DNA from: Lepidodermella squamata
Taxonomy: Eukaryota > Animalia > Gastrotricha
DNA: 33,492 nucleotides
Assembly (NCBI GenBank): GCA_047495785.1
Contig: JBLDXI010000141.1
Span: 1-33,492 of the forward strand
Direction of reading: 5' to 3'
The position numbers and the translations under genes are program-made. The stretch's first letter is position 1. Every line of letters starts with the position of its first letter. The notes beneath the pieces were generated by a model, which saw only the letters and a list, made by a program, of their open reading frames with translations, had not been told where the DNA came from and did not search any database. This document shows positions 24,497-27,400 of this stretch, piece by piece.

Positions 24497-27400
24497 TTTC
24501 GGAATTCTTCAAAATACAGCTGGGCTTTCACAAATGCCAAGTCGAAGCTAAATTCCGTCATATCTCTCTGACCCTGATATTTCATCACGGCCATTCCAGC
24601 CAGAATTATACTGACTTGATTGATAAAGTCTTTCTCCGACTTGTCCGAAAAAATAACACTAGCCGCTGCGACTGCCGCGCGACCCCACAGATCGTTCAAA
24701 AGCTCCTTTGAATTACTGTTCAACTTGCTGCCCGAACGGCCCTTGCCCTGACTGGCACGCAAGGGACCATCCTGGCGTCGCTCGTCCTGACTGGCACCCA
24801 AGCGACTGCTCGTTGACCCGCTATTGCTAATCCTCGACACATCCATCGACGACTCTGCCTCGAATTCCGACTCAGACTCGGCCTCGGCTTCGACCTGCTC
24901 AACTACTGGTGCCTTCTTGCCAGCCTCGGCGGCCTTCTTCGCTGCATTGCGTTTCCGCCTTCGCACGTTCTTCCGCTGGCTTCTGCTCAACTGCGGTTTC
25001 GCTACTTGCTGACTCGAACCCTGGGCTGGCTTGCCCGCCCCCGACCCTTGTGCTTTGGGTCCTTCGGTGGTTGACGAGGCCACCGGTTTCTCCACACGCT
25101 TTTCAGCGCGTTTTTCCGCCTCAGCCTTGGCCTTTGCCCTGATCGCCTCTGCTTCCGCTAACTGCCTCCTCTTGTCTCTCGCTAAACCATCTCTTACATA
25201 CTGCACGTACGGACATCCGGCGTAGTTGGTGGTGTGTTTCTGCGTGCAGTTGCGACACCGCAGCGCTTCACATACTTTGGCCTTCGCCGCTTCGTCCGTC
25301 AGGCCTTGCTCAACGCAAGCCTTTTTCGCAATTACCACCGGGCAAGCTTCGTCGCCCCTGAAGTGCTCACCGCTACAATCGGGGCAGGTTATCGTCTGGC
25401 TACATGACGTCCAGGAGTGGCCACTACCCTGGCACCGCTGGCAAATTTTCACCTGCGGGCTATAGTCTTTGACTTGCTGCACTCTGCTCGTCAGCGCAAA
25501 GAAGCCGATATAACCATTTCTCAGTTGGGCGTCCGCTTCGTCCTTAGTTTTGAACTCAATAAGGTACGTGCTGTAGCCAGGCCTACCCTGCTTCAGCTTC
25601 ACCACATAAACTGCTCCAAAATTCTCCTTATAGTACTTTACTACATCCTCAGCAGGCGCCGACGACGGTATGTCGATGGCTTTCACCTTGCGTTCCTCAA
25701 GCTTGAAGTCCGCTTGAGCTTTCGGTTTTTCACCAGATAAAGCCGCCGGAGGATGGGCGTTCGCGTTTGCCCCGAATGCCGGCCTTGACGGGTCTTTCCA
25801 TGACGGGCTTTCGTAAAATGCTTTCATTGAGGCCTCGTCGGCAAAAACAATCTGCCATCCGCCTTTCGGTTTCGGCAGCATCTTCACAACCCTGGCGCTC
25901 GGTGCTATCCTATGAACTTCTTGATTCATCAAATACTCGCTATTGAATCGTTGGCCATCGATTCGATCAACCATGGCGCTCAACTTCCAATTAATCGTCG
26001 GTTTGCCTCGCCAGTTGCCTGGTTTAGCGCCACCCTGGTTCGCCGTCTGAACCGGTGGCTGTCGACGATTCTTCGCCGTCACAGTGATGAATTCTCCTTG
26101 ACCATCTTGGCTACCTCGGCTATCTTCCTCTACTATCTTCTGCTCTTTTCCTCTCGCCACCGGCTTCCTCGTCACAGTCTGCCTCTCGGCCGCCGGTTTC
26201 GCACCATCAGTCTTCAAAAACTTCGCTGCGGTCATGTCTGACGCGGAAACCGAGGATTCCATGCCAGTAAAGTCGGGCGCGTTACTAAGATTAACAAACA
26301 TGCCATCATCACCGGCACGTCGCTTTCGCTCACTGGTCGCGCCTTTCGCCGAGCTTTGATCCATCGGCGTGTCTTCACCAGCCGTCAAATCTTGCGTCAT
26401 TTCCATAACTTCACCTTGGTCTAGTGGCCGCTCGACAGTCTCACCAGCGCCTTCACCTTCCCATGCTGCTCGAATTCTCTCCTCTTCTGCTCTTTGTCTC
26501 TCTTCGTTCTCATCTCGTCCGGCACCACCGCGCAACCGAAGAACCTCGAACAAATTCGACCTTTCTACGGACTCGCTACGCCTGACTTTATCCCTTAGAT
26601 CAATTTTGCTATCATTTTTGTCATTTTTCACGCGATTTTTTACAAGTTCGCGTTCACCTGGGTGAACAACAAACAGGAAAGAAAAATGGCCGAGCGACAT
26701 GACCATATCACAAACCACATCACACACAACCGTCAAAAATCGACTCCTTACAACAGCGATCGCGAGAAGCGCCGCACCACTGAGGAAAACAACTTTGCAT
26801 ACCATCTTCCACAAAATCGCTCTAGCAGCGCTATCAAGTATACCCGCGCTGTACTGCGGGGCGAAACAGGAACTCAAACTAGAGAGAAATTCATGAAAAA
26901 ATGCTAAGTCGCGGGAAATGCATCGTCCGCTAGGAGCGGTTGCTACTACTGCCGCCGCATAAGGCTCCGGCAGTAACGATGATCCCGAAAAAACCGAGCC
27001 AACGATGTCTAAGTCCGCACTATCGGACCGCGTTCCGCTAGGAGCGGTTACTACTACTGCCGCCGCATAAGGCTTCGGCAGTAACGCCGGTCCCGAACAC
27101 ACCGAGCCAACAATGTCTAAGTCCGCACTATCGGACCGCGTTCCGCTAGGAGCGGTTACTACTAGAGCCGCCGCATAAGGCTTCGGCAGTAACAGCAATC
27201 CAACAAGAGCGTCATCGTTCATCAAAGCAGAAGGCCCTGATGAACGAGCAAAATCAAAAGCAACTATCACACTATCGGGCCGCGTTCCGCTAGGAGCGGT
27301 TACTACAACTGTCGCCGCAGAAGGCTTCGGCAGTAACGACGGTCCCGAACACACCGAGCCACAAATGTCTAAGTCAACAGTATCAATTCCGCTAGGAGCG

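What the first reader, a model, noticed from the sequence alone, without database searches (positions are those of the whole stretch)
26524..26544. Ubiquitin C-terminus mimic (VLRLRGG) splits LINE ORF1: candidate retrotransposon polyprotein processed by host deubiquitinases
Seen: ORF1 encodes ...NLFE-VLRLRGG-AGRDENEE... at residues 1045-1051 of the 1731-aa track ORF. This sits at the boundary between the hydrophobic repetitive extension and the charged, gag-like 680-aa C-terminal part, and sense-strand composition shifts from T-rich to purine-rich in the same area. Established: VLRLRGG is identical to ubiquitin residues 70-76, and deubiquitinases cleave ubiquitin fusions after GG. Cytopathic pestiviruses use captured ubiquitin as a processing signal, and some APE-type LINEs use 2A peptides to separate products. 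Inference: the element uses only the ubiquitin tail (no ubiquitin fold is evident upstream) as a cleavage signal. Cleavage would release a normal-sized ORF1p and an accessory protein ending in GG, which might even be conjugatable. I see no element-encoded protease. I cannot confirm from here that this is undescribed.
Basis: partly seen in the sequence, partly recalled or inferred. Interest (0 to 1): 0.9.

Follow-up and report, generated by a model that had tools for sequence, protein, structure and literature searches.

The report
Conserved ubiquitin-tail motif in LINE ORF1
A family of jumping genes (LINEs) keeps the last seven residues of ubiquitin, VLRLRGG, between a highly variable leader and its Gag-like RNA-binding protein. 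Distant relatives in other genomes keep the same seven residues, which suggests, without proving it, that host ubiquitin-specific proteases cut the protein there.

Summary
VLRLRGG is encoded at 26524-26544 (- strand) in the first ORF of an 8.3-kb APE/RT LINE.

- Five distant ORF1 homologues from other assemblies (22-26% identical) carry the exact motif 97-115 residues upstream of the conserved core. In the window the distance is 185 residues.
- Their leaders are unrelated and 12-149 residues long. The motif codons differ at most third positions, with no amino-acid change.
- A second LINE family in this genome also has the motif.

The 1017-residue leader of the window's element is translated or at least kept open. 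It has no stops where 46 are expected, and none among at least 272 substitutions (7.5 expected). All repeat periods are multiples of 3. The first ATG of the element opens this frame.

No ubiquitin fold precedes the motif here. One relative has only a 12-residue leader. Another keeps a weak, in-register remnant of ubiquitin residues 35-60, which hints at an old ubiquitin fusion.

Cleavage itself is untested, and known deubiquitinases normally need folded ubiquitin. No paper searched links this motif to transposons.

The scan had flagged the same motif 24 times on other pieces of this genome, with no follow-up shown among the eight listed.

The parts
21396..29698 (-). Full-length APE/RT LINE (8303 bp), ending in GGAAAAAAA
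   Evidence: The insertion interrupts the rDNA unit. Twenty other copies align end to end at 94-100% identity. The 3' end is shown.
21368..21395 (-). 3'-side copy of the 26-28-bp target-site duplication (rDNA unit positions 15301-15328)
   Evidence: Overlap of the flank matches. The same junctions occur in all 20 fetched copies.
29699..29726 (-). 5'-side copy of the target duplication, carrying several substitutions relative to the empty site
29727..29763 (-). Putative spliced-leader exon end and GT donor (..TTTTCTGAG|GTTAGT..) directly upstream of the element, in the same orientation
   Evidence: Sequence of the empty site and of this copy's flank. The spliced-leader reading comes from earlier agents' notes and was only partly tested here.
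24481..29595 (-). ORF1 from the first ATG of the element (1704 aa plus stop)
   Evidence: The first ATG in any frame is at element nt 104. The frame is open in all 17 full-length copies.
26545..29595 (-). Leader of 1017 aa: hydrophobic, repetitive, frame conserved, amino-acid sequence weakly constrained
   Evidence: 0 stops against 74 and 79 in the other sense frames and a shuffle mean of 46. 0 of 7.5 expected stops among at least 272 substitutions. pN/pS 0.4-0.8. ESM recognition score 812 against 2622 for the core.
26926..27755 (-). In-frame tandem repeats of the leader (periods 108 and 246 nt)
   Evidence: Copy number varies between copies without breaking the frame.
27860..28488 (-). Further in-frame tandem repeats (periods 81 and 153 nt)
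26524..26544 (-). VLRLRGG, identical to ubiquitin residues 70-76. With the Leu at 26551-26553 it forms the conserved pattern L-x-x-V-L-R-L-R-G-G.
26005..26523 (-). Charged, low-complexity spacer after GG (starts AGRDENEE), with no detectable homologues
   Evidence: Homology to other ORF1 proteins starts only at query residue 220 or later. Alignments. Spacer composition.
25186..26004 (-). Conserved ORF1 core: RRM-like region plus three CCHC-type knuckles (25402-25443, 25342-25386, 25213-25257)
   Evidence: RRM_1 reaches the Pfam cut-off in homologues P0016 and P0019.
21710..24496 (-). ORF2 (928 aa): apurinic-type endonuclease plus reverse transcriptase, overlapping the ORF1 end by 16 nt
   Evidence: Pfam PF03372, PF14529 and PF00078

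Best explanation
The motif is a conserved functional module of one group of APE-type LINEs. Their ORF1 is built as a variable leader, then L-x-x-VLRLRGG, then a charged spacer, then an RRM/CCHC Gag-like core. The module is most likely what remains of an old in-frame ubiquitin fusion whose globular body has decayed or been replaced.

I infer that the tail still serves as a processing site. A host ubiquitin-specific protease, or another protease that reads LRGG, would cut after Gly-Gly and free a normal-sized ORF1 protein (680 aa here, starting AGRDE) from whatever leader precedes it.

This would explain why the 5' 3 kb of the window's element only needs to stay in frame. It has filled with in-frame tandem repeats and hydrophobic sequence that does not look like a natural protein.

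Shown: the motif, its conservation at the protein level, its position, and the open and probably translated leader. Inferred: the ubiquitin origin, the cleavage, and the identity of the protease.

The confidence given (0.55) is for the whole statement including cleavage. That the motif is a conserved functional element I put at about 0.9.
For: 1. Five ORF1 homologues (22-26% identical over the aligned ORF1, E 3e-23 to 3.5e-8) carry exact VLRLRGG 97-115 residues before the invariant core Asp. The window has it 185 residues before. Leaders are unrelated and 12-149 residues long.
2. The motif codons differ at most third positions between the six elements, with no amino-acid change.
3. These ORF1s are followed by APE or APE/RT ORF2s, so they are real LINEs. 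ORF2 identity between the window and L055 is 41%. None is present in this genome: the best own-genome match of P0018 is 34% identical.
4. A second LINE family in this genome has the motif 381 nt upstream of its core.
5. On the ORF1 tree the motif occurs in three subclades, which indicates long retention.
6. The residue after GG is A, A, G, S, S or M and never P.
7. The leader frame is under selection while its sequence is not protein-like. All repeat periods are multiples of 3. The first ATG of the element opens the frame.
8. The longest invariant run in 1.4 kb of copy alignment spans the motif.
9. Residues 54-80 of the P0019 leader align in register with ubiquitin residues 35-60 (19 of 2000 shuffles score as well; phmmer alignment).
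10. No 2A motif and no protease domain is present in the element.
Against: No cleavage was observed, and no RNA or protein data could be brought to bear; the two public runs were contigs only.

Established knowledge argues that ubiquitin-specific proteases need folded ubiquitin: split-ubiquitin (Johnsson and Varshavsky 1994) and the poor turnover of LRGG-AMC peptides compared with Ub-AMC. Here there is no fold. Pfam finds no ubiquitin even at E up to 10. A low-confidence AlphaFold model is all-helical. In L055 at most 54 residues can precede the motif.

Several close relatives lack the motif entirely (P0010, P0012, P0015, P0029, L052, L053), so it is dispensable for this type of ORF1.

The ubiquitin remnant in P0019 is weak: single-ubiquitin E values are 0.5-2.
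Confidence: 0.55

Rival explanations
1. The motif is functional but is not a cleavage site. The exposed ubiquitin tail binds a protein that reads this tail. It could act as a decoy or recruiter of a deubiquitinase active-site cleft, or of another ubiquitin-tail-binding factor, and so modulate ubiquitination or stability of ORF1p or the RNP while the leader stays attached.
For: The conserved residues (V70-G76 plus L67 in ubiquitin numbering) include the tail segment (residues 71-76) that, from knowledge of DUB-ubiquitin structures, lies in deubiquitinase clefts. Tail-only peptides bind such enzymes but are poor substrates (established knowledge). No ubiquitin fold is present.
Against: Leaders range from 12 to 1017 residues and are unrelated in sequence. 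That is hard to reconcile with a leader that stays attached to an RNA-packaging protein. The position is always at the leader/spacer boundary, and the next residue is always small or Met, as expected for a cut site.
Confidence: 0.2
2. Cleavage occurs, but by a protease other than a canonical host deubiquitinase. Candidates are an LXGG-specific papain-like or Ulp-like protease encoded by another mobile element or by the host.
For: Viral papain-like proteases cut LXGG followed by Ala or Lys in unfolded polyproteins (established knowledge), and the site here is LRGG followed by Ala. Some LINEs of the NeSL/Dualen type carry cysteine protease domains (recalled from memory, not tested here).
Against: No protease domain is present in ORF1 or ORF2 of this element. 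A trans-acting mobile-element protease would have to be present in every genome where the motif is kept.
Confidence: 0.1
3. In this family the 3-kb leader is not translated into a stable product. It would be a 5' UTR, promoter repeats, or an outron removed by trans-splicing. ORF1 would start downstream, for example at MEMTQDL, so the motif is silent here.
For: Tandem repeats at LINE 5' ends are typical promoter monomers (general knowledge). The leader sequence is weakly constrained and not protein-like. Relatives without a leader have ORF1 proteins of 687-735 aa. By earlier notes the animal appears to trans-splice.
Against: No stops in 1049 codons against 46 expected. None among at least 272 substitutions against 7.5 expected, P about 5e-4. 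All indels and repeat periods are in frame. G at first codon positions is 39%, as in the core. The first ATG of the element opens this frame. The motif region is the least variable stretch examined.
Confidence: 0.07
4. The motif is a relic of ubiquitin capture, or a chance match, with no present function.
For: Some relatives do without it. Seven-residue matches do arise by chance in a scan of this size.
Against: The seven residues are identical in six elements whose ORF1 cores are 22-26% identical to the window's, with synonymous changes at most third positions. The position is constant. About 3.5e-4 chance occurrences are expected in the homologue set and 5 are seen (my estimate).
Confidence: 0.03

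Closest known systems
Natural ubiquitin fusion genes (polyubiquitin, ubiquitin-eL40, ubiquitin-eS31), processed by deubiquitinases
   Same: An in-frame ...VLRLRGG followed by the mature protein. The next residue is small (eS31 starts with Ala, as here). The upstream part is dispensable for the downstream protein.
   Different: Those carry the complete 76-residue beta-grasp domain. Here only the last 7-10 residues are kept. The upstream part is unrelated and 12 to 1017 residues long. The downstream protein is a retrotransposon Gag-like protein.
Ubiquitin insertions in cytopathic pestiviruses (BVDV), which create a host-protease processing site that releases NS3 (established knowledge)
   Same: A selfish genetic element uses captured ubiquitin sequence as a signal for a host protease in its polyprotein.
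   Different: Pestivirus insertions contain whole or nearly whole ubiquitin and arise sporadically. Here a bare tail is kept over long evolutionary distances in a retrotransposon lineage.
2A 'ribosome skipping' peptides in APE-type LINEs (Odon et al. 2013, PMC3708506; PMC3894237)
   Same: A short conserved peptide separates an N-terminal leader from the functional LINE protein without an element-encoded protease. One described case lies in the N-terminal region of ORF1p.
   Different: The motif (D-x-E-x-NPGP) and the mechanism (co-translational recoding) are different. No NPGP is present here. Neither paper mentions ubiquitin.
LXGG cleavage sites of coronavirus and arterivirus papain-like proteases, which are also deubiquitinases
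   Same: A ubiquitin-tail-like LRGG followed by Ala, in an unfolded polyprotein context, works as a cut site without a ubiquitin fold.
   Different: The protease there is encoded by the virus. No protease is encoded by this element.
Split-ubiquitin C-terminal half (Cub, residues 35-76)
   Same: The leader of relative P0019 resembles ubiquitin residues 35-76 only.
   Different: Cub fusions are not cleaved unless the N-terminal half is supplied. This is the main argument against simple deubiquitinase cleavage here.
Site-specific LINEs of multicopy RNA genes (R1 and R2 in 28S rDNA; NeSL-1, SLACS and CZAR in spliced-leader genes), recalled from memory
   Same: Every copy lies at one fixed site in the rDNA unit, in the orientation of a small RNA gene, with a fixed target duplication.
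   Different: This element is APE-type with an ORF1, whereas the known spliced-leader-targeting elements are restriction-like-endonuclease types. Its clade was not determined here.

Membership tests
Ubiquitin family (Pfam PF00240, beta-grasp domain) | About 72-residue beta-grasp domain detectable by profile | tested here: not met
   No Pfam hit at E up to 10 for 60, 100 and 180 residues ending at or spanning the motif, nor for the leaders of four relatives.
Ubiquitin family (Pfam PF00240, beta-grasp domain) | Predicted beta-grasp fold upstream of the tail | tested here: inconclusive
   The single-sequence AlphaFold model of 133 residues upstream plus 30 downstream is all-helical with pLDDT 57.6. 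The P0019 leader model has pLDDT 44.5. L055 allows at most 54 residues before the motif, too few for the fold.
Ubiquitin family (Pfam PF00240, beta-grasp domain) | C-terminal LRLRGG tail | tested here: met
   Exact VLRLRGG in the window and in five relatives; two relatives have LH(L/H)VLRLRGG.
Linear ubiquitin-fusion substrate of deubiquitinases | Residue after Gly-Gly is not Pro | tested here: met
   A, A, G, S, S, M in six elements.
Linear ubiquitin-fusion substrate of deubiquitinases | Cleavage after Gly76 by a ubiquitin-specific protease | not testable with these tools
   No proteomic or raw RNA data were available.
APE-type non-LTR retrotransposon (LINE) with ORF1 | ORF2 with apurinic-type endonuclease and reverse transcriptase | tested here: met
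   PF03372, PF14529 and PF00078.
APE-type non-LTR retrotransposon (LINE) with ORF1 | ORF1 with an RNA-binding module (RRM and CCHC knuckles) | tested here: met
   Three CCHC-type knuckles. Homologues reach the RRM_1 cut-off. ESM neighbours are CCHC/ZCCHC3-like clusters.
APE-type non-LTR retrotransposon (LINE) with ORF1 | Multicopy, A-rich 3' end, target-site duplication, 5'-truncated copies | tested here: met
   At least 36 copies. 26-28-bp duplication. The element ends in seven A. Truncated copies L037, L045, L048, L049.
2A-containing LINEs | D-x-E-x-NPGP motif | tested here: not met
   No NPG or NPGP in ORF1 or ORF2.
Site-specific LINE of a spliced-leader gene | All copies at one site, in the gene's orientation | tested here: met
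   All 20 fetched copies show the junction(s) visible in the fetched DNA at unit positions 15328 and 15301/15303.
Site-specific LINE of a spliced-leader gene | The target is a real spliced-leader RNA gene | tested here: inconclusive
   A GAG|GTTAGT donor-like site lies 1 nt upstream of the duplicated target. There is no Rfam match. The spliced-leader reading rests on earlier agents' notes.

The most novel reading that the evidence does not exclude
A lineage of animal LINEs uses a bare ubiquitin C-terminal tail, without the ubiquitin fold, as a processing signal read by host proteases. This frees the 5' end of the element to evolve almost any in-frame leader, from 12 to over 1000 residues, which is clipped off to release Gag-like ORF1p. 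It would be a third way, beside separate ORFs and 2A skipping, for a retrotransposon without a protease to make several proteins. It would also show that some deubiquitinase accepts a tail-only substrate in vivo.
Probability: 0.45. Interest if true: 0.85.

Novelty: new variant of a known kind. Interest (0 to 1): 0.78.

Why it matters
LINE ORF1 proteins are thought to be made as they are encoded; 2A skipping is the only described way of splitting LINE products without a protease. A ubiquitin tail conserved at the leader/Gag boundary in several old LINE lineages points to post-translational processing by the host ubiquitin system, a host dependency not described for non-LTR retrotransposons in the papers searched. 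If cleavage is real, it also challenges the rule that deubiquitinases need folded ubiquitin. It would give a short natural tag for releasing proteins from arbitrary N-terminal fusions. If cleavage is not real, a tail-only ubiquitin mimic that is nonetheless strictly conserved needs another explanation, such as a deubiquitinase decoy, which would be equally new for transposons.

Tried and rejected
- Word-indexed protein searches with the ORF1 core plus junction, and with the alignment of motif-bearing ORF1s, found nothing.
- Both metagenome scans for closer relatives found nothing. One alignment was too divergent to search with.
- The closest relative by ORF2 (L051, 74% identical) is cut 330 residues after the junction, so it says nothing about the motif.
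I therefore could not read the second motif-bearing family (C15, C51, C116), the 82%-identical partial hit at C2:1156746, the host ubiquitin genes, or a ubiquitin domain inside an 833-aa open frame at C55:172306. A DNA-level comparison with host ubiquitin was not possible.
- RNA-level explanations for the invariant patch were rejected: fold z-score +1.1, no Rfam match.
- The GAGRDE duplicate near the N-terminus and right after GG shares no DNA similarity and is compatible with chance, about 7% by my estimate.
- The public runs were contigs only, so they cannot show transcript ends or expression. The 357-nt skip is repeat-number variation, not an intron.
- Apart from P0019, no leader resembles ubiquitin upstream of the tail.
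- Searches against solved structures did not place the element in a LINE clade.
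Full report
**Observation.** Read on the - strand, window 26524-26544 is GTT CTT CGG TTG CGC GGT GGT, which translates to VLRLRGG. It lies in one long open frame, 24481..29676, which is followed by a 928-aa ORF2 (21710..24496) that overlaps it by 16 nt. 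ORF2 carries an apurinic-type endonuclease and a reverse transcriptase. Upstream the sense strand is T-rich and the product hydrophobic (mean hydropathy +0.36, with several segments above 1.6). Downstream it is purine-rich and charged (mean hydropathy -0.81).

**What the element is.**
- The window is a eukaryotic rDNA array on the + strand (18S, 5.8S, 28S), with 5S on the - strand.
- The LINE occupies 21396-29698 on the - strand. It interrupts the intergenic spacer and has a 26-28-bp target duplication.
- All 20 further copies I could fetch sit at the same spacer position. The genome (121 Mb) holds at least 36 copies at 93-100% identity.
- The empty site reads ..AAATTTTCTGAG|GTTAGT.. on the - strand, and the duplicated target starts 1 nt after the G|GT.
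- Earlier agents of this scan read this as a spliced-leader RNA gene of a probable gastrotrich. I saw only the donor-like site and the fixed, co-oriented insertions, and Rfam has no match. I therefore treat the spliced-leader reading as a lead.
- The element ends in GGAAAAAAA.

**Is the 3-kb 'extension' translated?**
- The open frame starts 8 nt from the element's 5' end.
- The first ATG in any frame of the element (nt 104, window 29595) opens this frame. That gives a 1704-aa product with the motif at residues 1018-1024 and 680 residues after GG.
- The leader has 0 stops in frame, against 74 and 79 in the other sense frames and a mean of 46 in shuffles. G at first codon positions is 39%, as in the ORF1 core.
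- All four tandem-repeat periods (81, 108, 153, 246 nt) are multiples of three.
- All 17 full-length copies keep the frame although repeat numbers differ; ORF1 ranges from 1617 to 1736 aa.
- Among 12 distinct copies the leader carries at least 272 substitutions. About 7.5 of these should have made a stop if the frame were neutral, and none did (P about 5e-4). The core gives the same picture, with 9.2 expected and 0 seen.
- The amino-acid sequence itself is only weakly constrained: pN/pS is 0.4-0.8, against about 0.3 in the core.
- A protein language model does not recognise the leader as a natural protein: its recognition score is 812, against 2622 for the core.
- So the frame is selected and the sequence hardly is.

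**The comparative test.** ORF1 relatives were found by an exhaustive phmmer search of 1.84 billion representative proteins.
- There were 77 hits of 201-763 aa. Homology starts only at query residue 220 or later, and the motif is at query residues 101-107.
- Five of the hits carry exact VLRLRGG upstream of the core: P0016, P0018, P0019, P0020 and P0024.
- In the alignment the only invariant columns of the whole N-terminal region are L-x-x-V-L-R-L-R-G-G.
- P0018 reads SNLLEVLRLRGG, against SNLFEVLRLRGG in the window. P0019 and P0020 read GNLH(L/H)VLRLRGG, matching the ubiquitin residues LHLVLRLRGG printed in the alignment.
- The distance from GG to the invariant core Asp is 97-115 residues in the relatives and 185 in the window.
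- The leaders are 12, 47, 84, 117 and 149 residues long and unrelated to each other. The residue after GG is A, A, G, S, S or M.
- The seven codons differ between elements at most third positions, with no amino-acid change. The conservation is therefore at the protein level.
- The contigs carry APE or APE/RT ORF2s directly downstream. The window's ORF2 is 41% identical to that of L055.
- None of the five is from this genome. Their motif DNA is absent from it, and the best own-genome match of P0018 is 34% identical.
- In L055 an in-frame stop lies 42 codons upstream of the ATG, so at most 54 residues can precede the motif.
- In this genome a second LINE family (three copies, 735-aa open frame) has the motif 381 nt upstream of its core match.
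- Close relatives can also lack the motif: P0010, P0012, P0015, P0029, L052 and L053 have in-frame stops upstream and no motif.
- On a quick ORF1 tree the motif occurs in three subclades. The tree needs four changes, and starred branches force at least two. This fits an old feature with losses, but repeated gain is not excluded.

**Within the window's family.** A 42-nt stretch around the motif is identical in all 36 copies. The longest invariant run in 1.4 kb of aligned copies (59 nt) spans the motif. RNA structure and Rfam give no explanation for this.

**Ubiquitin fold and origin.**
- There is no profile hit to ubiquitin upstream of the motif in the window or in four relatives, even at E up to 10.
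- A single-sequence AlphaFold model of the window's junction is helical and of low confidence.
- The 12-residue leader of P0020 rules out a fold there.
- The P0019 leader aligns in register with ubiquitin residues 35-60 (G-x-x-PD-x-x-R ... DG-x-x-L). Only 19 of 2000 shuffles score as well, and phmmer reports the same alignment to solved ubiquitin structures.
- This is weak but suggests that the module descends from an in-frame ubiquitin fusion whose body decayed while the tail was kept.

**Mechanism.** The conserved residues include the part of ubiquitin (residues 71-76) that lies in the active-site cleft of deubiquitinases. The position is always the leader/spacer boundary, the leaders are arbitrary, and the next residue is never Pro. 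The simplest reading is a cut site after Gly-Gly that releases mature ORF1p.

The main objection comes from established knowledge, not from a test run here. Ubiquitin-specific proteases generally need the folded ubiquitin body: the C-terminal half of split-ubiquitin is not cleaved, and LRGG peptides are poor substrates. For that reason I put cleavage by a host deubiquitinase at about one half. I keep three rivals: a non-cleavage role as a tail mimic, another LXGG-reading protease, and an untranslated leader in this one family.

**Known analogues and novelty.** Ubiquitin fusion genes, ubiquitin insertions in pestiviruses, LXGG sites of viral papain-like proteases and 2A peptides in LINEs are the nearest analogues. 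In the library searched, no paper holds LRLRGG or RLRGG together with retrotransposon or transposable element. The one LRGG hit is irrelevant. The two 2A-in-LINE papers do not mention ubiquitin. The scan itself holds 24 first-reader notes of the same motif on other pieces of this genome, with no follow-up shown among the eight listed.

**Limits.**
- There are no raw RNA reads or proteomes. The two runs that hold the sequence are contigs.
- The organisms behind the metagenomic relatives are unknown.

Noticed in passing
window 15295-15370 (empty site) and 29699-29763; loci L031-L050: Every copy of this LINE examined is inserted at one site of the rDNA spacer. It is co-oriented with a donor-like GAG|GTTAGT that earlier agents read as a spliced-leader RNA gene. 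The 5'-side copy of the 28-bp duplication carries several substitutions. That would fit read-through transcripts from the small gene being copied along with the element.
   Followed up: partly
window 6546-6873: A 328-bp GC-rich insertion at the same spacer site in the first rDNA unit. It has no similarity to this LINE, so it is probably the stump of another element that targets the same spot.
   Followed up: partly
window 1-2961; 20118-20121; 21119-21120: The window starts with 2.9 kb of non-coding sequence that matches neither the rDNA unit nor the LINE and abuts 28S at about model position 665. The LINE-bearing unit also has an internal 28S deletion (unit 11659 to 13553) and a spacer deletion that removes most of 5S (unit 14552 to 15052).
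   Followed up: no
window 26476-26592: Between -48 and +49 nt of the motif start there is a single variable site among 19 distinct copies, counting synonymous positions. This is the least variable stretch in 1.4 kb. No RNA structure or Rfam family explains it.
   Followed up: partly
window 29461-29478 and 26509-26526: The hexapeptide GAGRDE occurs twice, seven residues after the first Met and overlapping the last Gly of the motif. All third codon positions differ and there is no DNA similarity. It is compatible with chance.
   Followed up: yes
window 26731 (+ strand), run X1: One contig of a run guessed to be RNA ends at 26731 and continues with 22 A on the + strand, antisense to the LINE. This could be a polyadenylated antisense transcript or an artefact.
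   Followed up: no
G000:C74:191986-276000 and C21:931036-935465: Dense clusters of ubiquitin-domain matches lie inside open frames of 450-610 aa, away from any LINE ORF1 match. This looks like an expanded host gene family with ubiquitin-like domains. C55:172306-172521 has a full ubiquitin domain with VLRLRGG inside an 833-aa open frame.
   Followed up: no
L052:1-123, L053:248-330, L057:1-200: Three different LINEs from one metagenome, two without the motif and one with it, share a near-identical sequence at their 5' ends. It may be a common target gene or a shared promoter.
   Followed up: no
G000:C29:3260350, C30:1202744, C46:70417: Three identical loci encode VFRLRGG outside the listed ubiquitin-domain matches. 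This may be another repeat family with a tail-like motif.
   Followed up: no
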